Positions 13,150 through 34,254 of a DNA stretch of 64,000 nt are shown piece after piece. The notes beneath the pieces are model-generated. The model was not told the DNA's origin. It saw only the letters and a program-made list of their open reading frames with translations, and did not search any database. Both the position numbers and the translations under genes were made by a program. Numbering within the stretch: the first letter of the stretch is position 1; each line of letters opens with the position of its first letter. The DNA comes from Bigelowiella natans CCMP2755 (taxonomy: Eukaryota > Protista > Cercozoa), in NCBI GenBank assembly GCA_000320545.1, contig ADNK01000825.1, positions 1 to 64,000 on the forward strand, written 5' to 3'.

Positions 13150-15407
13150 AAGTTTTAACCGATGAAACGCGGGGGGGATATTCTTGAAACTGGGGCATTA
13201 AGTAGTGTATTACCAACGCCAAAATTTCCCGATTTACGACGTATCTGATACAATAACACTGTGAGTTGTGAGAAAGAAAGTGATGACTTGAACATACCTG
13301 ACGCGTTTATTATCATCCACCAGATCCCTCACTTTCCCTTCCTGAAAAATTCCAGATGAATCCTCTCTTTGAATCATTTGTTGCCAATTGTAGGAAATCA
13401 ACAAGTGATATTGCCAGAAGAAGGAATACCAGTTCTGCGATGAGTTTCTTCCTCTCAGCTTCATCCGCTCCAACCGCCTCACCAGGTGAAGTTGTCGTAG
13501 GTAAAGTTATCATCTGATAGATGAATTGCATAATTTGAGAATGGATAACATTTTTCGATTTGCATCTATGCTTACTTTTTGCTTTGGTGCTTCCGTTGCA
13601 GCTGACCTAGTGCCTCCTGAAACTATTACAAATCACGTTTCTTTTCAGATTCTCTCACTCAAAATGTCGAGACGTGGAGTGCAAGGACGTTTACTTATTT
13701 AGGAACATTCTTGTTTTCTACCATCCCAAATTTGTTTTCGACTTTTCTGTGCGTTTTGGTCAGCAGTATTACCAGGTTTGGGGCTGGATTGAGAAGCGTT
13801 TCTGGCGACCTTCTCCAAAAAATCGGCTTCTTCATCCTTAAGGTTAAGAATTCATGTTAACAACAGGAAAGAGCTCAACATTGTGAAATGTTGCACGGAA
13901 AGATTTTGCTATTTTCCCAAAATCTTCAAAGCGTCGTGAGTAGCAACTCTCTAAAAATTTACGTAGATTTTCCTTCAATGATGAAGATCTATCAAAAATA
14001 AATCATGAAACGGGACCCAAAACTATTGATAGCATCTATCAATCTGGGCACTCTGGTATCAAATCTGTCACTACCGGGTGGATATCATTTCCAGCTAAAT
14101 CCACAGCCTTTAGAGCTTTAAAACACCTGAATTTGAAGGTAATTTAAATGAAAAATCTACTTGCAAAAATTTAGAATAGCTTTGACCCAGCTTTCCAAAT
14201 GGGTGGCTCAGTGAGTTCATTGTTCGACGCGATCAGTTGCTACGAATTAGCGAGGAAGAAGGTGGTCATGATTGTGGTGAATAAGTCATATTATGTCATT
14301 TATTCCTTCAAAGAAAGACAATTTGAAGTCTCCTAACTATGCTAGAAGTGAAATGGTGCTACCTGTATCTTGATGAGATGCGTCATATCCGGTAACTTTT
14401 TCAATCTGTTGTTTTTCATACTGACAATCCGAAGGTTTCGCATGCCCTACGATAAGTAGATGAAAATTTACATTCCCGTGGCACTAATTAATTTCCTATT
14501 CAAATAGATAACCTTAAAATCGACTTCCTCCAGTTCGTTGTCATCTAGTTCTACCCTCATCAGTTTCTGTAAAAGAGTTCCATTAGAATTCTTCCGCCCA
14601 GAGATCACACAAAAGCAAAGTTTTAGTATTTAAACACTAATTACCTTGATATGAGCGAGGGATGGAAATTTTCTGAGCTTGTTGAAAGAGATATCTAGAT
14701 TAACTAGGCTCGTAGCACCTAGGAATGTGGTGATAAAATCTGAGAGTATGGCCTTTTCTTCGTTGTTGTCAAGACGAAAACATAATTTTAGTGAGGACTG
14801 GGACCTTCGAATTTTTTAATATCAATTTCTTCGATTTTGTTCCTCGACAGATCGAATAGCAACAGCTGATGACAAACATTCAACATTCACTGAATCCAAC
14901 AATCGTCTCGTTAAACATATGACGCTTCTGACGCTTCTGACGCTTCTGCCCCACATGGTGAAATTGTAGTAGCTTCTAAGAAATATCTTTTTAATGCTTA
15001 CATTTGAAAGTCCTGATACATCCGGAACCTCAACAAGTTCATTGTTGGGAACGTAGATGTACTCCAGATTTTTAAGAGCAGACAGACTCGGCAGTCTCCC
15101 GATCTGATGAGGTACGTTGTTGTAAACACCCACCTCTATCGAAAAGCATAAACATGATTAAACTTACATTATTTTCTTGCATGTATAGCTCTTTGAGGTT
15201 TGTGAATGGATTTAATGAAGGCACATCGAGTTTCCTAAGATCGTATTGAGGCTCAATCAAGGAATGACCATGATTCGCTCACAATCCTACGACATACCCT
15301 TGAGAAGAATTGATGGCGAGTTTATTCACACTCTTCGCATTTTCGGCGATGTTAGCGCCAAGATCACGCGCCCATTTGATCAGCGCTTTTTCCTTCTTCT
15401 TGGACAT
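13150..15407 (-). CDS. Leucine-rich repeat protein (SDS22-like LRRs) with low-complexity/coiled C-terminus; many short introns
   Basis: ATG at 15407 (MSKKKEKALIKWARDLG). Spliced exons give NLKELYMQENN, NLEYIYVPNNELVEVPD, LLLFDLSRNKIEEI, SLVNLDISFNKLRKFP, KLMRVELDDNELEEV, NLRIVSMKNNRLKKLPD, QLIASNNELTEPP and ALKAVDLAGNDI with GT-AG introns. 3' end approximate. Confidence 0.88.
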
Positions 15408-24587: not shown

Positions 24588-26700
24588 GCTACTACTTTCA
24601 GGTGCTCTGCTGCTGCAATGGGTGCGGGGAAAGCTGCAAACACCATAAATGCAGGATCGCAAAACGATACATGATTTGAAACCTGGAGGGGGAGAGAGGA
24701 GAAGGGAATAAAGGCTTTGGGTAAGAGAGAAGGAGAGACATCATGCAATGCTAACATGGGTTCAATGGAGAATTTCGAGAAGACTCGATAATTGAGCCAC
24801 AAATATACATATAAAGGAAGAAAGGCTCGTAAGGATAATCGATAGCATCATCATGAATTCCAATATAAAGTGAATGACCCACAGCTCAGGACCAAAATCA
24901 CTACCTATCCTAGCTTTTTTTTTTATGAAACGAGGCCGTAGCGTACATATTTCTCAGGCCTCAATGCATATTCTAGACAGATCACAACGATCATTGAGCT
25001 GGCATTGGACAACCAGTATTGGGGCTTCATCAGGAGAGGCCAACTCGCCCCTTGTATCGATCCACAGATAACCCTGAGACGACGTACGCGCAAAAATATG
25101 GTGGATCCATAAAAGAGGGGAGGGTGATGGGATTAGAGGGCATGAAGGTACATGTGCTGGATAGGCGACGATAACTAAATGGAAAGGTATTTATCCTTGC
25201 ACTTTCGGCTGATTCTTGATGATGATGCAACTTCTATTTTTAGCTCACTGCTTCTTCTTCACGGACACATCACGACCCCACACCATCACACCGTGAAGAA
25301 GAGTATGGATCTTGCAACATAACGGATAGGCTGTAGCATCAATCGCCTCCAGGGTGGAAGTGGTCGATACCTTCGCAACAAGGAGGGATAGTGAGGGAGG
25401 ATAGATATGCGACAACGAGAATAATGATTTATGGTTATGATGGCGATGTGACACCAAATAACGATGACAACTAGCTATAGCCAGAACCACTGCCTACACC
25501 GACCAGCAAATGTGACGAAGAGACTTAGAGGCCACTCGTAATAACTCCTATGAGTTGTTTGGAGATGTGATGTTAGATCATGCTGCTGCTGCTGCTGCGT
25601 CATTTCCTAGCTTATCAGAGAGGAAAATCGGCTTTGGCCTGTGACACACCTTCTCTTCCATCTTGTTGATTGTCTCGCTAGAGTACTTCCTGGCATTGGC
25701 TCTCTCCGATACGTACTTATACGCGAACTAATGAGAAATACCCACCAGAATCTGTGTCGCCGTTGTAGTGATGATAATGCTACTGATCTACCTTTAGTTT
25801 TTCTTCACCCGACGAAGGAAGGCCAACGCCTCTTTGATCGATGTATGCATAAAGGTCTTCTATTGATTTCAGACTTGGGGAGGAAGGGAGTCCATAAGTT
25901 GCAATGGTTGCCACCTGAAAAGCAAATTTCACGTATGATTCACGCGAATAGTGTAGCAAAATATAGAAACTACCGTCGCTCCTATAAGAATGCTCACGAT
26001 CATACCGAGAAGTCTCAGAGGAAACAAGATGACAGAATTGAAGCTAATTCTCAGGCGGTCCTACAGTTATTCGTTGCTGTCAGATAATACGACAACCCCC
26101 TTAATTTCCGATGTTGGAACACACCATTTCTCCTATCCTCCATGTATCGTTCACGAATGGGTTCGACACGGGTCTTGGAAGTTTATCGTAAACAGAAAGC
26201 CTCCTCCGATGCATTCGGATCACTCTAGGACGCACGGTTTTGTGACCGCTAGGCCTCCGATCCACACATTCTCCCAAACGCCACCACACGTAAGAACCAG
26301 CACAGAGCTGTACTGAAAGGACGAACGTGAGGAGGAAATTGTATCCCGAGGCAAAGGCCGCGCGATATGCTTGCGCTACAAGAACGTAAAAGATAAGATC
26401 GTAGGAGTCGAAGGAAGTTGTTGAGCCCTGCATGGATGAGATTCTCTTCTTCGTTTTCTCCGTCGATTGGTTGTTGTGATGAAATCTGTTCGGATAGAAG
26501 GCAAGGGCAACGGTGTCTTCGTAAGACTTAAATTGACCATATTTCATACCTGCGACAACCAAAAATGTTTGTCTTAATACGCTCTTCCACTATCTATCGT
26601 CAAATTCGAAGCTGCAGTCGCCGGACTCCACATCGGCACCATGAGCAATCTGCAGCGATTATAATGTGCTCTGAAAAACACTTTTTCGTTCACGAGACAT
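19073..26700 (-). CDS. LPCAT: Lysophospholipid acyltransferase, LPCAT1/2 type with C-terminal EF-hands
   Basis: Exons: NPFVND, ILFPLRLL, PLPPWRR, GELASPDEAPILV/VSNHVSFCD (HxxxxD), ILIYPE/ATCTNGENLITFKAGAFNPG, PVQMIGVKY, PIYDPNLEEKKD, then EF loops DTDKDGKLSRDDF, DEDGDGYIDFRVY, DVDGDGYLNLNEF and DTNKDGKIALEEF. Stop TAG at 19073-19075; 5' end uncertain (26214 to about 26900). Confidence 0.92.
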
Positions 26701-26733
26701 TTGGGCTTGCGTTGTTCAGTGTGCACATTGCAG

Positions 26734-26770
<37 letters not shown>

Positions 26771-27154
26771 GTTGTGTGTTCTTGTGTGAGCATGCTCACA
26801 GTTGCACCTGCTTTTGCATATTTGCTGTTTTTGTTTCAGTGACGCCCCAGGAGGATGTTGTGGACACTGTGGATTGCACTTTTTGCTCCGGTCATGGCAG
26901 AGTGGTGGAGTTTACCCACGTTCTCCTATTTCGATTGGTCGATTAGTTTCCTAGCAATGTAGAATGCTTTTGTTTGATAGTCTTGAGTGCTTCAATGATA
27001 AGGAATCCTCCCAGTCCAACGAGCTGCTCAGCTGGCGAAGTGTTCCTCGTCGACAAGTGCTATCTAATTTCGAAAACTGAAGTAGGATGAAATCTTAGCT
27101 TTAGAAATATATTTGTTGGGGAAAAAGCAAGTAGATGCTTAATGCTACGAAGTC

Positions 27155-27531
27155 TTGATATGGACATATGTGTCATTACACGACCTCACATCAATTGTGT
27201 GTGTATTTGTGAATTTGTTGGTTGGTTAGTATCTTGGTTTAAGCAACAACCAGCTTGAATCGATTCCAAAGGAGTTATCCCAGCTGAAGAATCTGTCGGT
27301 CAGTCTAGTGCTCGGAATTGATATGGACATATGTGTCATTACACGACCTCACATCAAATGCGTGTGTGTGTGTGTTTGTGTATTTGTTGGTTGGTTAGCA
27401 ACTCTATTTATACAACAACCATCTTGAATCGATTCCAAAGGAGTTATCCCAGCTGAAGAATTTGAAGGTCAGTTCAGTCCAGTGTTCGATATTGATATGG
27501 GCATATGTGTCATTACACGACCTCACATCAA

Positions 27532-27570
<39 letters not shown>

Positions 27571-27922
27571 GTGAATTTGTTGGTTGGTTAGTATCTCCAT
27601 TTAGGCAGCAACCATCTTGAATCGATTCCAAAGGAGTTGTCCCAGCTGAAGAATTTGAAGGTCAGTTCAGTCCAGTGTTCGATATTGATATGGGCATATG
27701 TGTCATTACACGACCTCACATCAAATGCGTGTGTGTTTGTGTGTGTTTGTGTGTGTGTGTGCGTGTTTGTTTGTTTTTGTTGGTTGGTTAGTATCTCTCT
27801 TTGGGCAACAACCATCTTGAATCGATTCCAAAGGAGTTATCCCAGCTGAAGAATCTGTCGGTCAGTCTAGTGCTCGGTATTGATATGGGCATATGTGTCA
27901 TTACACGACCTCATATAGCGTG

Positions 27923-27953
<31 letters not shown>

Positions 27954-28025
27954 TATTTGTTGGTTGGGCAGTATCTCGATTTAAGCAACAACCATCTTGA
28001 ATCGATTCCAAAGGAGTTATACCAG
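27155..28025 (+). repeat. Tandem array of five LRR exon+intron cassettes (unit 169-200 bp)
   Basis: Exons 27230-27298, 27399-27467, 27592-27660, 27792-27860 (69 nt each, AG/GT bounded, phase 0) and 27972-28025. Introns share gtcagt...gatatgg(a/g)catatgtgtcattacacgacctca...(GT)n...ttgttggttgg(tt/gc)ag. Confidence 0.97.
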
Positions 28026-29198
28026 GTGAACTAGATAGTGTTCAGTACGGTACATGATGTTTATGTAGTTTTGGGAAACAATATTTCAGTATTTATATCA
28101 CGGCATTGCGACGCTTATTTGTTGGTTAAAATTAAGTATATGGCGGTTTTATACTCGAATTGATAGGGAATTTCTTTCAAAGGGGTTTTCGCATTTTTCG
28201 TCATGCTGCATAGTGCTATATTTTGTATCGATTATTTTATTTTGAATCTCTTATTTTAAACATTACTATCCTGATCTTGGCAACTGGACGCCGAAGTTAA
28301 ATATGAGCCACAACAACAAGGATGAGCTGCTTCCCTGGGAATTGAGATATGTTGACCCGAAGGTTTGACCAGAATTAACGTGGCCTTTTAGACATTGTAT
28401 TTTTTGTCCTTTCTCCTGGCACCAAGTCAGATTGATACAATGTTTCTTGCTTGTTGCTGAACATACCGAATGGTTTTTTTGGGGGGGGGGGGGGGAGACA
28501 AAGTCCAACATGCTGGATTTAAGGGGAAATAGGCTCAAAATGATACCGGAGTCATTGCTAAAGTCTTGTAATCTTGAGGTGTGTTCGATGTGGTTTTTTT
28601 GGTGCTTGTACCAAGGATGAGATTTATCATATTGTATTTCAAGAGTGACAAATACGTCAATTAGTTTTCAAAACGACACGTTTGCGAATATTTATGCCAC
28701 TATAATTATCACTATTTTGATTTTATATGTCATAGTAGCGTTTGTACCCTGTTGGGGAGTTCATCCTAAATTGTTTTTCAAACACCTACCCCTGCAAATA
28801 TTATTCATCATATGGACAGAAAATTCATTTTGATGGCAAAGAACTGATCACAATGAGCTACAACGAAGTCGTGCATCTCAATGAACAAGGTCGCTGCCAT
28901 GACTTTAATAATATTTATCTATCAACTGTTCCTCATCGTATCTGTGTCATAGGCCTAAAAACATGGCTAATGGCCCTGGCAAATATGTACGAAATCGACG
29001 AAATGCATATCAACAAGGTTTTATCTCTTGTTCAAGTGCAGAAACAAGCGCTAAATAAATATATGCCAAATAAGATTTATATCGAATCTGATGAAACGTT
29101 TGCGCGTTCAGTTGATGGGTGAAGAGTACTCTGCGATGGATCTTGTGCACATTGAAAAGGAAGAGCTAATGGAGGTTTTCACGAGTTATACAGCTTAG
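27230..29198 (+). pseudogene. LRR receptor-like gene or pseudogene built on the cassette array, with degenerate downstream LRRs and a weak SAM-like C-terminus
   Basis: Cassettes encode YLGLSNNQLESIPKELSQLKNLS etc. Downstream are ITALRRLFVG*N* (two TAA), LNMSHNN, MLDLRGNRLKMIPESLLKSCNLE, GLKTWLMALANMYEID and LMGEEYSAMDLVHIEKEELMEVF. I found no convincing first exon or continuous spliced ORF. Confidence 0.5.
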
Positions 29199-29229
29199 CT
29201 GGCAATTCAATGACCTAATAATATACTGT

Positions 29230-30790
29230 GTCGATGTGCATCTCTATCATGTGCAAATTTTCCATGGGGGATGCATAATACTATGTAATTTTGCTCATTC
29301 TTCTATCTTCAGCACACGGATGTACGTACATTTCGTTGAAAACATGCGCACTGATGGTGTTTGTGCGCTCAACCAGGTCATTGGCAAGAGAGGCCCGACT
29401 TCAAAACTGCACCGTTTGTTCTCGAATTTGAAATCAAGAAACGACCAAACATGTGCTTTCTGACCATTTAAATTTCTCAGCAAAATGCAAATGGTTTTCG
29501 TGTTGCAGTATTTGTGGTCCGTTCTCCCAAATCGATTCACATGTCATTGTGTTTGTTGAGGTTTTGACAGTGCTAGACTGTGCCATGTTGATTTTGTGTA
29601 GCATTCAATTCCTCGATTTTGTGCTGTCATCAACGCTTCATTTGTTGCATCATTCCAATCGCATTCAAAAAGCACACGCTGAACGTGCATGTGCACCTAA
29701 TCGACCTCTCTAGCTCTGCATGCTGGGGTCTGTGTAGCAAGCGTATACGTGGTCACGTGCTCATCAACAATGAATGCATCATCACATGAAACTTTTGCTG
29801 AAATCATTTTGCTTCGCCTTGCATGCCCTGTACGTCGCTCCACACATCGCTAGCGTTGTTCTCGGCAATCACACATCAGCACGCCATACATGTGGCAGTC
29901 GCATTCGCTCATTGGAACCCATACATCTAGCCATGCATGATGGATGCATGCGGCATGTCGCTTCCCACATGGCGTGTGTTGTGTTGGTAGCTAGCGCTAT
30001 GGCTAGCTAGCTGGCTAAAGCATGCATGTGCGCAGCTGCTTGTTATGAGACGGATACGATGTAATGAAATGTTTAAATTTTTCAATGGTCATCCTGATGT
30101 AGTAGCTGTGCAATGCAGCGGCTACATAACAGCGCTCAAATTGTTTGTATCTGTTTGTTACAATAAGCTGCTTATTACTATTGCATGTTGATCGAGATTC
30201 TGCTGTTGGGATAATGGATGATCGCGATGAAACAGCAAGCACATCTTTGTGCAAACGAACTTGCGTACAAGTCTAGCTAGAAGTGTTGCAGTCGCAGCGC
30301 TAGATCGTCATCAACTGCGCAAGTACCATAAGCCAGTCTAGCTAACTAGCAGCTTTTAATGAACACGACCTAGCTAGCTAGCTAGCTAGTGCAATGAATT
30401 CAATGAAGAAGAATTTGCTTTCTCAACAATTAGTTAACGCCCACGTGCATGCATGATACCATGCCCATTGGCTAGGGAAAACCACAGCTAATCGAGCTAC
30501 GCACAGTTGCAAGTGAAGACTATGCTAGAGTGGACTTTGACAACACAAGCAGGCTCATCATTATCAATCGCACCCGCACGACAGTAGTCAATTTGCAAGT
30601 CGATGAGGTGATCAACTAGCATTGGTTGTCCGATGACTCCGTTCGTGGGCACAATCCTAGCAACACTGGTCTTGAAAATGAAAAATGAGGTATGGTTGCG
30701 ATGGGGATGAGAGTCCAGATTTGAATGAAAACGCAACGCATGTTATCACATGCAGAAAATTGCGTCCATCGATATGTCGATAGGACCCTC
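29230..30790. other. Intergenic C-to-T-decayed block 4 with fossil reading frames
   Basis: catgcatg, tgca and (ctag)n at 29989-30012 and 30370-30389. Stop-interrupted frames lie antisense to the open ORFs 29453..29713 and 30497..30736. Confidence 0.65.
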
Positions 30791-30906
30791 CCCTCTTAAC
30801 CGTGTCTGTACAATCAATCAGTGCGCGGAATTTTAACCTCCGCCACTGCTATTCTTCTAATATATTTGACCGATCATCATCATCATCATCATCATCGCCG
30901 TCGTCA

Positions 30907-31513
30907 TTAAACAAGGGTCTTGATGAGCTTAGCCAACTCAAAGCCGAAGCCAACCCAATTGCCCTCCGAGTAGTCCGTGCACGCGGCACCGACCTCCTTC
31001 TCAATCTCAACCCCGTTGATGAGTATGTGGAGAATCTGCTCAATCCACGATATCTCCGGCGCGACGCCAAGCTTCACAGCGAGCTTCTCAAGAAGGTCAG
31101 CGAACTCCTGCATGTGGCAATCCCCAACAGAGTTGGACACGGCAGTGAATCCCTTTCCTAGGTCAGCAAGCCCCGCTTTAATCGCATCCTTGTCGTGCTG
31201 CCAGTGGAATATGACGCTTTGGTGAGAGTCGTGGAACTGTTGATATGCGTCACCAAAATCGGTCCAGGCACTCTTAAGGTCGGTCTCACACGCCTTGAAG
31301 CTGCCCTCGATGTCCCCGAGGAATTGTAGAACGCCAACCACCATGTAGCAAATGTCCGATGTGCAGGCGTGCCCTTCTGTCCACTGTGCAAGGTCGTTCA
31401 TTACCTCTCCAAGCGACTGCCCGACGGCCCTAGTCAGAGGAGGGAAGCAACGAGTGAGCGACAAGGTAAGAAAACGAGCCACCATCTTTCTTTTGTATAT
31501 TCTTTTTTTCCAT

Positions 31514-31586
<73 letters not shown>

Positions 31587-33634
31587 GCCGAGTATGTTTA
31601 TGTCTATGTGTGTGTGCGCGCGCTCGCGCGCTGTGATCAATGCAACACAAACAGGTTGACATCTTCATCGCTACGAGTCACAGGTTGACATCTTCATCGC
31701 TACGAGTCACAGGTGCCACGGCAGTTGCAATTACTGCTACCTGTAGTCGTGGTGTTCGAAGGCCTGGAGAGTCGCGTACAGTTCCTCGTAAAAATCAGTT
31801 CCGTGCACCAGGACTTTAGTGACGTCATCGAGGATGGTGGTGTTAGCAAATCCAAAGACGTTCGCTTCCTGCTCGATGTACTTGAGCTCATCCGTGATGC
31901 CACATCCCGTCACAGCCTTGGAGATCTCATTCAAACCCTCGGCCCATTCGTTCACGGCGCTGCCGATCTTTTTCTGGCCGAAGTACTGCGCGCCGGCGAT
32001 GAAAGCTTGGTTCGCGGCATACAGGTCCTGCTTGCAGATCGAGAGGTCTTGGAGAGCTATGCCGAAAGCATGGAGCAAACCCTCGACGACTTTGCACACG
32101 AATAGGTTGCACTTGGAGCTGGCGACAAGATCGGAGAGCGTTCCGAGGTCGTTCCCGAAGGCCGCCCAGTTTTGGGCCTTGAAGTCCTGAGAGGCGCGCG
32201 CAAGGTCATCCGTAACATCCGCTCCTTCAACAATGATGGAAACCACGCTGGCGATCTCAGCAGATACGGCTGACCCACCGAGCTTCTTGGCAGTGTCTTC
32301 CAAGATCTGGGCGAGCTCGGGAATGTCGCATGCCGATACAGCGCCTGCTAGCTCCTGGACGCCTTGCGCCAAATAGCCCACGGCTTGGCCCAAACTCCCA
32401 CTCTCGAAGCGACTCATAGCATTTTCGATGTCATACCAAGCATTATCCGCCTTGCCGGAGCACTTGGAGAAGTCTTGGAGTTCGAGTTGGAAAACGCCGA
32501 GGAGCCCCTCGATGACAATGCAGGCCTTGGTCTTGCAGTTTGAAGCACGAAGCGACTGGAGGAGGCGGCCAAGCATCAGACCCGCCTGGTTGAAGTCTCC
32601 AGAGGCGATTGCAGTGATGGCTTGGTAAAACTCGTCGTAAACATCCGCGTACTTAACCACGATCTGGTATTTGCCAGACACCTCTTTCACAATCGCTGCC
32701 TCGAGCTTGGGCGCAACCTTAGCGAGGACGTTAGCAAGAGGCTTTAGCCCGCATGCGTCATTTGCCAGCGCCTGAGCGAGGTAGTCGAGTCCCTTGGCCA
32801 TGCTCTCGACTGATTGCTCAGCCTTCTTTTCCTGCCATAGGTCGACCGCATACGTAAGGTTTTGGATCGCTGGCTCAATTGCAGATTCGCAAGGTCCGAC
32901 GTCCTTGGCCACCGCCTGAACAATCTGAAGAATGCCGTCTACGAGCTTGCATGCCTTAGAGCTTCCGCATCCACCGAAGACGTTTGAAAAGTCGTTTACC
33001 ATTGCGCCGATGGCGTCCCCAATGTCAGAGGCGCTGCCAGAGCGGACAGCGGCGCTCAGAGCCTCGATGTCCTTCTCAAGGTCGCTCGCGCCAACAAGAA
33101 TTTCAACGGCCTTATCAAACCCGGCGGTGGAAATATTTGCCCATCGGATGGCGGCAGCAAGGGCGTCAAGGCGCGCTTGAACCTGCGGCACACCGCAGTC
33201 CTTTACAGAGGATGACAACGATGAGATCGCGCGTCCGAGGGAAATCACTGCTGTCGTGTAGTTCTTCCCTTCGAAATCTTGAGCGAAATCTTTAAACTCG
33301 TGGCCAGATCCAGAGATATCTTTCACGCACCTAGAAAAAGCGATACGATGTTGAGACATGAAGGGAATGATGAGTAGCTATTCAGCAACGAAAAAATGGA
33401 TATTCAAAAAAAGATTTACGTTTGCGTGTCAACGCCAGAGACGCCAAGAAGCTTGAACACCACGTTGAGGATCGTTGCAGCGTCGGGAGTAGGAATTTCC
33501 GCACGAATGTGAAGAAGCGGGTTGTGAAAGGTGGTGTTGACGTGCTGCTGTTGTCTGGTGACGAGGGACATGTCGAATCCAGACACAGCAACCGCAAAAA
33601 GAAAAAGAGCTAAGGACTTAGAGGAAGCCATCAT
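30907..33634 (-). CDS. Secreted protein of about 775 aa with five ~143-aa Cys-paired alpha-helical repeats, unknown function
   Basis: Exons 33634-33420, 33330-31741 and 31429-30907 join in frame via GT-AG. Signal peptide MMASSKSLALFLFAVAVSG. Repeats share C..D..., a mid Cys, I.V.G.D/E...D/E, W...G..LG.L and linkers CGSSKAC/CKTKAC/CNLFVC/CTSDIC. Confidence 0.9.
31651..31714 (+). repeat. 29-bp exact tandem duplication (2 copies plus partial) in an intron
   Basis: acaggttgacatcttcatcgctacgagtc x2 followed by acaggt. Confidence 0.95.
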
Positions 33635-34254
33635 GTGTAACCTAGTAGTGGGGGCGTCAATCTCGTTTTTGAATACCTGTAGACCAACTTCACATGAATA
33701 CAGGTAAAACTAACCCTTTCACCCAAAAACTGAATCCCCACCCACCATCAGACGCAAATATATTGTGCTGTAATTGTATTCTCATGGTTTTAAGGAGGAA
33801 CGGTTCATAATAATGTATTCTCATGGTTTTGAGGGGGGGGGAGATGGACCGAGAGAGCTCTTTGGTTATTGACTACTACTGGTTAACGAAGTCTGGAGGT
33901 TGGCGGCTTTTCCCAACAAAATGGTGATCTTTTATACGAAAGACTACACAATATTGTTGTCGCAGTATAACAACGAGATCACCCTAACCCCAACCCAAGC
34001 CCTAAGCCATGTTGGTTGGAGAAACAGTTCTAAGGTGTTGCCCGTTTAAATGTTGTCGCTCTGTCAAAAATGACGAGTGTTTTTCGAAAATGGAACGTCT
34101 GGAAAAAGAAAGAGTAACGCGGTAACTGAAACCTTCTCTGCACTGGTGGGAGGTTGAACGAAACGAAAGGCGACATTATCTCTCTCCCTCAGCCGTCAGC
34201 CATTCTTCGACTCGGAAGGAGCGTAGAACGAAACAGCTGTTGTAGCACTCCTTG
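33635..34254. promoter_or_regulatory. Putative bidirectional promoter
   Basis: Lies between head-to-head start codons; contains a 17-bp direct repeat tgtattctcatggtttt (33775-33791, 33814-33830). Confidence 0.5.

What the first reader, a model, noticed from the sequence alone, without database searches (positions are those of the whole stretch)
27230..28025. One-exon-one-LRR cassette array with hypervariable ligand-facing codons
Seen: five cassettes translate YLGLSNNQLESIPKELSQLKNLS, QLYLYNNHL...LK, YLHLGSNHL...LK, YLSLGNNHL...LS and YLDLSNNHL...LYQ. In the four full exons the scaffold ESIPKELSQLKN is identical apart from one synonymous change. The x positions of LxxLxLxxNxL vary: codon 3 = GGT/TAT/CAT/TCT/GAT (G,Y,H,S,D), codon 5 = AGC/TAC/GGC/GGC/AGC, plus codons 1, 6, 8 and 23. 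All 69-nt exons are phase 0, so any can be skipped, duplicated or swapped in frame. Known: these x residues form the concave binding face of LRRs, and a similar one-LRR-per-exon shuffling architecture was described for brown-algal (Ectocarpus) ROCO genes. Inference: a diversifying recognition or immune-receptor system in this protist.
Basis: partly seen in the sequence, partly recalled or inferred. Interest (0 to 1): 0.85.

Follow-up and report, generated by a model that had tools for sequence, protein, structure and literature searches.

The report
Tandem LRR exon array, Bigelowiella gene
Five near-identical exon-plus-intron units, each encoding one leucine-rich repeat, lie inside an already annotated 236-residue LRR-only gene of the alga Bigelowiella natans; they differ almost only at the six binding-face residues, a pattern already described in brown algae and Tetrahymena.

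Summary
Window 27155-28054 holds five tandem units of 169-200 bp. Each is one LRR exon plus a (GT)n-bearing intron: four exons of 69 nt and a fifth cut to 54 nt, all with phase-0 boundaries. All amino-acid differences among the four full exons fall on six positions (23, 1, 3, 5, 6, 8). These are the x positions of LxxLxLxxNxL.

The array is exons 2-6 of an annotated Bigelowiella natans gene, JGI Bigna1 86952. It encodes a 236-aa LRR-only protein, and Pfam finds no Roc, COR, kinase or NACHT domain in it. By eye it has no signal peptide or membrane helix. The introns are as conserved as the exon scaffold, so the invariant scaffold reflects recent duplication or homogenisation, not constraint alone.

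The variable 24-nt patch also varies more at third codon positions. The tail of the fifth copy is far more diverged than anything else in the array. I therefore favour concerted evolution, with selection keeping surface residues distinct, over a proven arms race.

I found no other copy in the window, no transcript data, and no docking/selector pairing. LRR exon arrays are published for brown algae (72 bp, phase 2) and Tetrahymena (90 bp, phase 2). This is a small rhizarian example: a new member of a known kind, of modest interest.

The parts
26964..27056 (+). Exon 1 of JGI gene Bigna1 86952 (ATG start, 93 nt, ends in phase 0; N-terminal 31 aa)
   Evidence: Exact spliced mapping of P0186 to the window. 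Protein identity.
27155..28054 (+). Tandem array of five exon+intron units, with start-to-start spacing of 169, 193, 200 and 180 bp. It begins inside intron 1 and ends in the decayed tail of copy 5.
27230..27298 (+). Cassette exon 1 (gene exon 2), 69 nt, phase 0/0, YLGLSNNQLESIPKELSQLKNLS; 3' end/donor of type A
27399..27467 (+). Cassette exon 2 (gene exon 3), 69 nt, QLYLYNNHL...NLK; 3' end/donor of type B
27592..27660 (+). Cassette exon 3 (gene exon 4), 69 nt, YLHLGSNHL...NLK; type B
27792..27860 (+). Cassette exon 4 (gene exon 5), 69 nt, YLSLGNNHL...NLS; type A
27972..28025 (+). Cassette exon 5 (gene exon 6), truncated to 54 nt (18 codons). It is spliced at a GT donor where the other copies read CAGCTG.
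28026..28054 (+). Decayed remainder of copy 5. It has an in-frame TAG at 28032-28034, and the original donor position reads TT instead of GT. From codon 17 on it differs from every other copy at 18-19 of 41 positions.
27299..27398 (+). Array intron (100 nt) with a near-invariant 40-nt core, a (GT)7 tract and an invariant 3' end TTTGTTGGTTGGTTAG
27468..27591 (+). Array intron (124 nt), (GT)17. Its first 66 nt are identical to those of the next intron.
27661..27791 (+). Array intron (131 nt), interrupted GT tract
27861..27971 (+). Array intron (111 nt), (GT)13. Its first 55 nt differ at 3 positions from the first array intron.
28297..28362 (+). Gene exon 7 (66 nt, phase 0/0): an older, degenerate LRR (LNMSHNNKDELLPWEL...)
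28820..29198 (+). Gene exons 8-10 (28820-28889, 28953-29017, 29112-29198 including the stop): an irregular repeat and a helical C-terminal tail
28488..28568 (+). Unannotated candidate LRR exon inside annotated intron 7 (81 nt, ag|..|gt, phase 0/0, contains LDLRGNRLKMIPES). It may be an alternative exon or one missed by the gene model.
   Evidence: LRR profile hit of 11.4 bits, the best outside the array; sequence read

Best explanation
The array is exons 2-6 of an annotated Bigelowiella natans nuclear gene, JGI Bigna1 86952 (EukProt P007772). The gene encodes a 236-residue LRR-only protein of the 23-residue SHOC2/RSU1/Leptospira-LIC LRR class.

Its LRR domain grew in the germline by tandem duplication of a unit of about 170-200 bp, made of one 69-nt phase-0 exon plus its intron. 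Each intron carries a (GT)n tract and a near-identical core, which give ample homology for unequal exchange (inferred).

The units have since been kept nearly identical, introns included, by very recent duplication and/or gene conversion, that is, concerted evolution (inferred from the pattern). A 24-nt patch at the 5' end of each exon, plus the last codon of the preceding exon, has stayed different. This patch encodes the beta-strand and concave-face residues.

Because conversion cannot skip single codons, selection must act there. It is purifying at L2, L4 and N7. At the six x positions it either maintains a distinct residue in each repeat or favours new ones.

The product is most likely a cytosolic protein-binding scaffold with five surface-differentiated repeats. 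This is an evolutionary process. Nothing here shows a somatic or splicing-based diversification system.
For: Gene identity:
- The alignment-seeded search recovered P0186, named jgi/Bigna1/86952/estExt_fgenesh1_pg.C_150159.
- It maps without mismatch onto 10 GT-AG exons of the window.
- A neighbouring ORF is 100% identical to B. natans P007774.

LRR class:
- Pfam LRR_4 scores 94 bits and LRR_8 74.5 bits, with nothing else found.
- The AF2 model gives pLDDT 92-97 over the five cassettes, with strands at cassette positions 1-3.
- Foldseek aligns the model to LIC12759 at 0.9 A and SHOC2 at 1.0 A over about 113 residues.

Duplication of exon and intron together: the intron core has 1/40 variable columns and the last 20 intron nt have 2/20.

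Patch contrast:
- 10/18 nt columns vary in the six concave codons, against 4/51 in the other codons (p=2e-6 against other exon plus intron blocks).
- E1 vs E4 differ at 6/24 in the patch and 0/45 outside. E2 vs E3 differ at 6/24 and 1/45.
- Downstream introns differ at 3/55 and 0/66.
- In concave codons pN=0.42. In the other 17 codons pN=0 and pS=0.19.

Homogenisation rather than youth alone:
- Third positions vary at 4/8 in the patch against 1/15 outside (p=0.03).
- The copy-5 tail differs at 18-19/41 although its first 16 codons and upstream intron match the others.
- Intron 5' halves run A-B-B-A while the 3' halves follow a different order.
Against: With only five copies, codon-model tests have no power. 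I could not separate maintenance of distinct residues from positive selection. E2/E3 share 0/66 intron differences yet 6 nonsynonymous patch differences, which strong recent positive selection would also produce. No orthologue, second strain or transcript was available, so neither expression nor copy number is independently confirmed. The 20-nt core was absent from JGI metagenome/metatranscriptome contigs, although a neighbouring gene's B. natans transcript is held by the JGI source that the look-up of encoding contigs reads. The cytosolic location rests only on my reading that there is no N-terminal hydrophobic stretch. The AF2 model is poor for residues 146-175, so the annotated 3' half of the gene may be partly wrong.
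Confidence: 0.55

Rival explanations
1. Very recent tandem duplications followed by true positive (diversifying) selection on the six concave-face codons. The protein would then be evolving new ligand specificities, as proposed for brown-algal ROCO LRR exons.
For: All 14 minimal nonsynonymous steps fall in six codons, with none in the other 17. E2/E3 and E1/E4 differ at 6/24 in the patch but at 0-1/45 in the rest of the exon and 0-3 per 55-66 nt of intron. Several codons differ by 2-3 nucleotides. The same positions are reported as positively selected in brown algae (PMC3341825, PMC11378527).
Against: Synonymous or third-position variation is also concentrated in the patch (4/8 vs 1/15). This points to an older or unhomogenised segment rather than to faster amino-acid substitution. 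The unhomogenised tail of copy 5 is about 45% diverged, similar to pN in the patch, so the patch need not exceed the neutral rate. The sample is five copies from one genome.
Confidence: 0.25
2. One reading: a diversifying recognition or immune-receptor system. Symmetric cassette exons are skipped, duplicated or swapped, by alternative splicing or recombination, to give a repertoire of binding surfaces. The array would be one of many in the genome.
For: All of exons 1-7 are multiples of 3 nt with phase-0 boundaries, so any skip stays in frame. An unannotated in-frame LRR exon candidate lies in intron 7. Brown-algal ROCO LRR exons are alternatively spliced (PMC11378527). Elevated exon skipping was reported for B. 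natans in the genome paper, though later data disagreed (PMC6142364). Other first-stage notes describe ankyrin and other one-repeat-per-exon arrays in this genome; these are unchecked.
Against: The gene is a 236-aa LRR-only protein with no signalling domain and, by eye, no membrane or secretion signal. No other copy of exon or intron occurs in the 64 kb, on either strand. No docking/selector complementarity and no significant intron structure were found. No isoform or transcript was retrievable. Skipping an internal LRR shortens the solenoid but does not create new residues.
Confidence: 0.1
3. No selection on the surface: the pattern is a neutral by-product, from a mutation hotspot next to the (GT)n tract, an assembly artefact, or a decaying pseudogene.
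For: Each variable patch starts 20-25 nt downstream of a (GT)n microsatellite. No transcript was found in the searchable collections. Tandem 170-200-bp repeats are prone to mis-assembly.
Against: The intron nucleotides between microsatellite and exon are nearly invariant: the last 16 nt are identical in all four and 2 of the last 20 columns vary. Within the patch L2, L4 and N7 never change the amino acid, while all six x positions do. There are no stops or frameshifts in four full copies, and all splice sites are intact. JGI annotated the gene with an EST-extended model name.
Confidence: 0.05

Closest known systems
Brown-algal (Ectocarpus, Saccharina) ROCO and LRR-only genes with 'shuffling' LRR exons (Zambounis et al. 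2012, PMC3341825; Teng et al. 2024, PMC11378527)
   Same: One LRR per exon in tandem exon+intron repeats. The exons are symmetric, so copy number can change in frame. Variable or selected sites lie on the concave face. LRR-only genes with such exons also exist there. Both lineages belong to SAR.
   Different: The brown-algal exons are 72 bp with phase-2 introns and a different exon boundary within the repeat. Here they are 69 bp, phase 0, with the boundary between x2 and x3 of LxxLxLxxN. That argues for an independent origin. The host here has no Roc-COR. No inverted or inactivated intronic LRR relics were found. This is one array of five copies, and alternative splicing has not been shown.
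Tetrahymena 90-bp-exon LRR gene arrays (Xiong et al. 2019, PMC6564038)
   Same: Tandem arrays of exactly equal-length LRR exons with similar introns. They are attributed to ectopic recombination or unequal crossing-over. The genes are young and lineage-specific, in a SAR protist.
   Different: Tetrahymena has 90-bp exons, more than 96% flanked by phase-2 introns. There are thousands of genes, and they are associated with a LINE-like REP element. Here there are 69-bp phase-0 exons, a single small gene, and no nearby retroelement seen.
Solved 23-residue LRR proteins: Leptospira LIC10831/LIC12759/LIC11098/LIC12234, human SHOC2, RSU1
   Same: The same repeat class (xLxLxxNxLxxIPxEIxxLxNLx). Sequence match reaches E=4e-18 and structural match 0.9-1.4 A over about 113 residues at 40-50% identity. 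Their concave faces bind partner proteins.
   Different: These are resemblances of repeat type only, and orthology is not implied. The Leptospira genes have no introns. SHOC2 has about 20 repeats.
Lamprey VLR and insect Dscam (cassette-based receptor diversification)
   Same: Repeated LRR (VLR) or duplicated-exon (Dscam) modules with variable binding residues.
   Different: There is no flanking cassette bank and no incomplete germline gene, as VLR would need. There is no docking/selector RNA pairing for mutually exclusive splicing, as Dscam would need. Nothing indicates somatic diversification.

Membership tests
Leucine-rich repeat proteins, 23-residue SHOC2/RSU1/LIC class | LxxLxLxxNxL core with a 23-residue period, and Pfam LRR models above their gathering scores | tested here: met
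   P0186 scores LRR_4 94 bits (cut-off 27) and LRR_8 74.5 bits (cut-off 27). The five-exon alignment gives the consensus YLxLxNNHLESIPKELSQLKNLx.
Leucine-rich repeat proteins, 23-residue SHOC2/RSU1/LIC class | Curved solenoid fold with one short beta strand per repeat | tested here: met
   AF2 pLDDT is 92-97 for residues 31-140, with strands at 32-34, 55-57, 78-80, 101-103 and 124-126. Foldseek matches 4u09 at 0.9 A and 7txh at 1.0 A.
ROCO proteins (LRR-Roc-COR) | Roc GTPase domain followed by a COR domain in the same protein | tested here: not met
   Pfam finds only LRR families in P0186. No Pfam hit reaches its cut-off in any + strand stop-free segment from 26.6 to 30.2 kb. The next gene's transcript, on the minus strand, covers 30414-33724.
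Brown-algal type I 'shuffling' LRR exons | Each LRR on its own exon, in tandem, with symmetric phase | tested here: met
   There are four 69-nt exons and one 54-nt exon, all phase 0/0.
Brown-algal type I 'shuffling' LRR exons | 72-nt exon and phase-2 introns (PMC3341825, PMC11378527) | tested here: not met
   The exons are 69 nt and the introns are phase 0.
Brown-algal type I 'shuffling' LRR exons | Positive selection (dN/dS above 1) at concave-face sites | tested here: inconclusive
   pN is 0.42 in the six concave codons, against pS of 0.19 elsewhere and about 4-10% intron divergence. But third-position variation is also enriched in the patch, and the tail of copy 5 is about 45% diverged. Five copies are too few for site models.
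Brown-algal type I 'shuffling' LRR exons | Alternative splicing of LRR exons; intronic or reverse-strand LRR relics | tested here: inconclusive
   No relic copies occur on either strand of the window. Splicing could not be tested because no transcript was retrievable.
Tetrahymena 90-bp-exon LRR arrays | Exactly 90-bp exons flanked by phase-2 introns | tested here: not met
   The exons are 69 bp with phase-0 introns.
Dscam-like mutually exclusive exon clusters | Docking site complementary to a selector sequence next to each variant exon | tested here: not met
   The inverted-repeat search of 26400-29400 finds no arm pairing with the conserved intron core. Intron folds have z-scores of +1.5, -0.7, -1.9 and +0.3.
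VLR-like somatic cassette assembly | Banks of partial LRR cassettes flanking an incomplete germline gene | tested here: not met
   nhmmer and blastn find no further exon or intron copies in the 64 kb. The gene is complete from ATG to stop.

The most novel reading that the evidence does not exclude
Bigelowiella natans, and thus Rhizaria, has independently evolved a family of symmetric one-LRR-per-exon arrays. Cassette exons would be skipped or exchanged to vary the binding surface. That would be a third independent origin within SAR, after brown algae and Tetrahymena, of an exon-array-based recognition repertoire. The unannotated in-frame LRR exon at 28488-28568 would be one alternative cassette.
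Probability: 0.1. Interest if true: 0.6.

Novelty: new member of a known kind. Interest (0 to 1): 0.3.

Why it matters
If the pattern holds genome-wide, LRR exon arrays with surface-restricted variation would be documented in all three SAR branches. Each branch would have a different exon length and phase. That would be a clear case of convergent use of tandem exon duplication to build and retune binding surfaces.

As it stands, this is one small array in an annotated LRR-only gene. It is useful mainly as a clean textbook-like example. Introns serve as an internal neutral control, and an unhomogenised edge copy exposes concerted evolution. It also flags a probable flaw in the gene model's 3' half.

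Tried and rejected
1. Protein word search with the stop-free 80-aa read-through of exons 5-6 found no candidate. The real product, at 236 aa, lies outside the length window. Seeding the search with an alignment headed by a 268-aa relative then found it.

2. Exhaustive phmmer over 1.84 billion representatives gave only generic SHOC2, ROCO and NACHT-LRR relatives at 66% identity or less. The gene itself did not appear.

3. The exact 20-nt exon core in JGI metagenome contigs gave five single hits, all unrelated ESIPKEF contexts. This yields no transcripts and no second array.

4. Exact-product look-ups of P0186 and P0022 are not on record.

5. Ab initio enumeration of 5' exon chains gave 1507 open models and was uninformative. 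An ATG at 26855 that I considered by eye was wrong; the annotated start is 26964.

6. ROCO architecture is rejected: no Roc or COR domain.

7. Dscam-like docking/selector pairing, an Rfam family in the introns, and stable intron structure were all negative.

8. The search of earlier scan notes by sequence was blank.

9. A mutation hotspot next to the (GT)n tract is rejected. The intron bases between tract and exon are nearly invariant, and the scaffold codons inside the patch keep their amino acids.

Full report
**What is there.** Tandem Repeats Finder reports a 169-193-bp period over 27155-28030 at 87% match. The repeat finder gives five copies spaced 169, 193, 200 and 180 bp apart. The 20-nt exon core occurs five times against 0.02 expected, and only here in the window.

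The cassette exons are 27230-27298, 27399-27467, 27592-27660 and 27792-27860. Each is 69 nt and lies between an AG and a GT. The fifth copy starts at 27972. The translations are those quoted in the finding. nhmmer with the exon profile and blastn with the 40-nt intron core find no further copy on either strand of the 64 kb.

**Organism and gene.** A neighbouring ORF (31737-33359, minus strand) is 100% identical to a protein whose cluster includes EukProt Bigelowiella natans P007774, JGI Bigna1 131793. A JGI contig with that gene's transcript maps to the window at 99-99.9% identity. The window is therefore nuclear DNA of the chlorarachniophyte B. natans.

The stop-free read-through of two cassette exons found nothing in the length-limited protein search. 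In the exhaustive search it found only generic LRR relatives at 66% identity or less. Seeding the last search with an alignment headed by a 268-aa relative recovered P0186. P0186 is EP00466_Bigelowiella_natans_P007772, or jgi/Bigna1/86952/estExt_fgenesh1_pg.C_150159, at 236 aa.

A spliced mapping places P0186 on the window without mismatch as ten GT-AG exons:
- 26964-27056
- the five cassette exons; the fifth is spliced after codon 18, at 28025
- 28297-28362
- 28820-28889
- 28953-29017
- 29112-29198

Exons 1-7 are all multiples of three with phase-0 boundaries. So the array is already part of a public gene model. From my own knowledge of JGI naming, the 'estExt' prefix marks a model extended with EST data. 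I could not inspect those ESTs.

**What the protein is.** Pfam finds only LRR families in P0186: LRR_4 at 94 bits and LRR_8 at 74.5 bits. No stop-free + strand segment between 26.6 and 30.2 kb reaches the score cut-off of any domain family. The next gene, on the minus strand, has a transcript covering 30414-33724. There is therefore no Roc, COR, kinase, NACHT or TIR module, and the gene is not a ROCO.

The N-terminus (MLLFDSLECFNDKESS...) has no hydrophobic signal-like stretch, and I see no membrane helix. This is direct reading, not a predictor result.

AlphaFold2 with a 34-sequence alignment models the five cassettes at pLDDT 92-97. It places a three-residue strand at cassette positions 1-3 in every repeat. 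Foldseek superposes the model on Leptospira LIC12759 (0.9 A, 113 columns, 50% identity), on other LIC proteins, and on SHOC2, RSU1 and LRRC8. The same proteins lead the sequence search of the PDB. Residues 146-175 of the model are poor (pLDDT 36-53).

**Where the copies differ.** Among the four full exons every amino-acid difference lies at positions 23, 1, 3, 5, 6 and 8. With the repeat written L22-x23-x1-L2-x3-L4-x5-x6-N7-x8-L9, these are x2, x3, x5, x7, x8 and x10 of LxxLxLxxNxL. By established LRR structure these residues flank and alternate with the core leucines of the beta strand and face the concave side.

- All six concave positions vary. None of the eight other non-structural positions does (Fisher p=3e-4), and none of the 17 remaining positions does (p=1e-5).
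- By Nei-Gojobori counting, the six concave codons have mean pN=0.42 and pS=0. The other 17 codons have pN=0 and pS=0.19.
- At the nucleotide level, 10 of 18 columns vary in the concave codons, against 4 of 51 in the rest of the exon. In the intron, 1 of 40 core columns and 2 of the last 20 nt vary (p=2e-6 for concave codons against all the rest).

The sharpest contrast comes from the two most similar pairs:

| Pair | Codons 1-8 | Codons 9-23 | Downstream intron |
|---|---|---|---|
| E1 vs E4 | 6/24 | 0/45 | 3/55 |
| E2 vs E3 | 6/24 | 1/45 | 0/66 |

**How to read this.** The introns are as conserved as the exon scaffold. Mean pairwise divergence is 3.8% for the intron core, 5.6% for exon codons 9-23 and 25% for codons 1-8.

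Three observations make me favour concerted evolution, with the patch escaping it, over 'recent duplication plus accelerated amino-acid change':
- Third codon positions vary at 4 of 8 sites inside the patch but at 1 of 15 outside (p=0.03). This includes synonymous CTT/CTC at L2 and TTA/TTG at L4. The patch looks older at silent sites too.
- The fifth copy matches the others through its upstream intron and first 16 codons (0-1/24 differences in codons 9-16). From codon 17 on it differs at 18-19 of 41 positions. It has an in-frame TAG at 28032, TT at the old donor position, and a GT donor at 28026 where the other copies read CAGCTG. This is the behaviour of an array edge that homogenisation does not reach. 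It suggests the array is much older than the interior similarity implies.
- Intron halves are mosaics. The 5' halves run A-B-B-A, while the 3' halves follow another order (a-b-a-c-b from the intron before cassette exon 1). The (GT)n tract lies between the halves.

Conversion tracts cannot skip single codons. Selection must therefore act inside the patch: purifying at L2, L4 and N7, and either maintaining or diversifying at the x positions. Five copies in one genome cannot separate those two. A neutral hotspot next to the (GT)n tract is unlikely, because the intron bases between tract and exon are nearly invariant.

**Tests of the 'system' idea.** No inverted repeat pairs the conserved intron core with a unique flanking site. 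No Rfam family matches. The four introns do not fold better than shuffles, with z-scores of +1.5, -0.7, -1.9 and +0.3.

No transcript or isoform could be retrieved. The exon core is absent from JGI metagenome/metatranscriptome contigs apart from five unrelated hits. The exact product is not on record in the contig index. I do not know whether the JGI sample that holds the neighbour's transcript is part of the scanned collection, so this absence is weak evidence.

**Context in the genome.** A second, unrelated LRR gene lies on the minus strand (about 14100-15300). It also carries one divergent 22-residue LRR per short exon. One repeat per exon is thus not special to this locus. Other first-stage notes on this genome describe an ankyrin one-repeat-per-exon array and a 24-aa repeat built by exon duplication. 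I did not check them.

**Comparison with the literature.**
- Brown-algal ROCO and some LRR-only genes have one LRR per 72-bp exon with phase-2 introns. They show exon shuffling, positively selected concave sites and alternative splicing (PMC3341825; PMC11378527).
- The B. natans array shares the principle but differs in exon length (69 bp), phase (0) and boundary position within the repeat. That argues for an independent origin.
- Full-text searches pairing Bigelowiella with LRR or exon duplication/shuffling terms returned nothing describing this.

**Verdict.** The feature lies in an annotated gene and belongs to a known kind of architecture. I rate it a new member of a known kind, with interest about 0.3.

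Noticed in passing
window 28488-28568 (+): An unannotated 81-nt open segment with ag|..|gt and phase 0/0 lies inside annotated intron 7, preceded by a run of about 15 G. It encodes a good LRR (contains LDLRGNRLKMIPES; 11.4 bits, the best LRR hit outside the array). Joined after exon 6 it keeps the 22-23-residue register into exon 8 better than annotated exon 7 does, and the AF2 model of the annotated protein is poor over residues 146-175. It may be a missed or alternative exon.
   Followed up: partly
window ~14100-15300 (-): A second LRR gene on the minus strand has about seven divergent 22-residue LRRs, each on its own short exon separated by introns of roughly 70-130 nt. One repeat per exon seems common in this intron-rich genome.
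   Followed up: partly
window 27155-27197 and the four later copies (27318, 27492, 27685, 27880): A 40-nt intron core (TTGATATGGRCATATGTGTCATTACACGACCTCACATCAA) is 97-100% identical in the first four copies and over the first 34 nt of the fifth, which is tighter than synonymous sites in the exons. It has no Rfam match, no significant fold and no complementary partner nearby. It is probably just homogenised, but a splicing-signal role was not excluded.
   Followed up: partly
window 27299-27971: Every array intron carries a (GT)n tract of different length (longest pure runs of 7, 17, 6 and 13 repeats). This accounts for the intron length differences (100-131 nt). The tract sits where the 5' and 3' intron halves recombine into different mosaics, so it is a candidate site of unequal exchange.
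   Followed up: partly
window 30414-33724 (-); locus L006: A JGI contig (sample 3300017192, 2905 nt) is a spliced B. natans transcript of the neighbouring 774-aa gene. It matches at 99-99.9% identity in three blocks, implying introns of about 87 and 308 nt. The EukProt/JGI model for this gene (P0022) is only 602 aa, so that model appears truncated.
   Followed up: partly
window 26104-26589 (-): A minus-strand open frame begins with MKYGQFKSYEDT... at about 26547, some 420 nt from the LRR gene's ATG at 26964. The two genes are divergently oriented, and a (GT)22 tract (26736-26779) lies between them.
   Followed up: no
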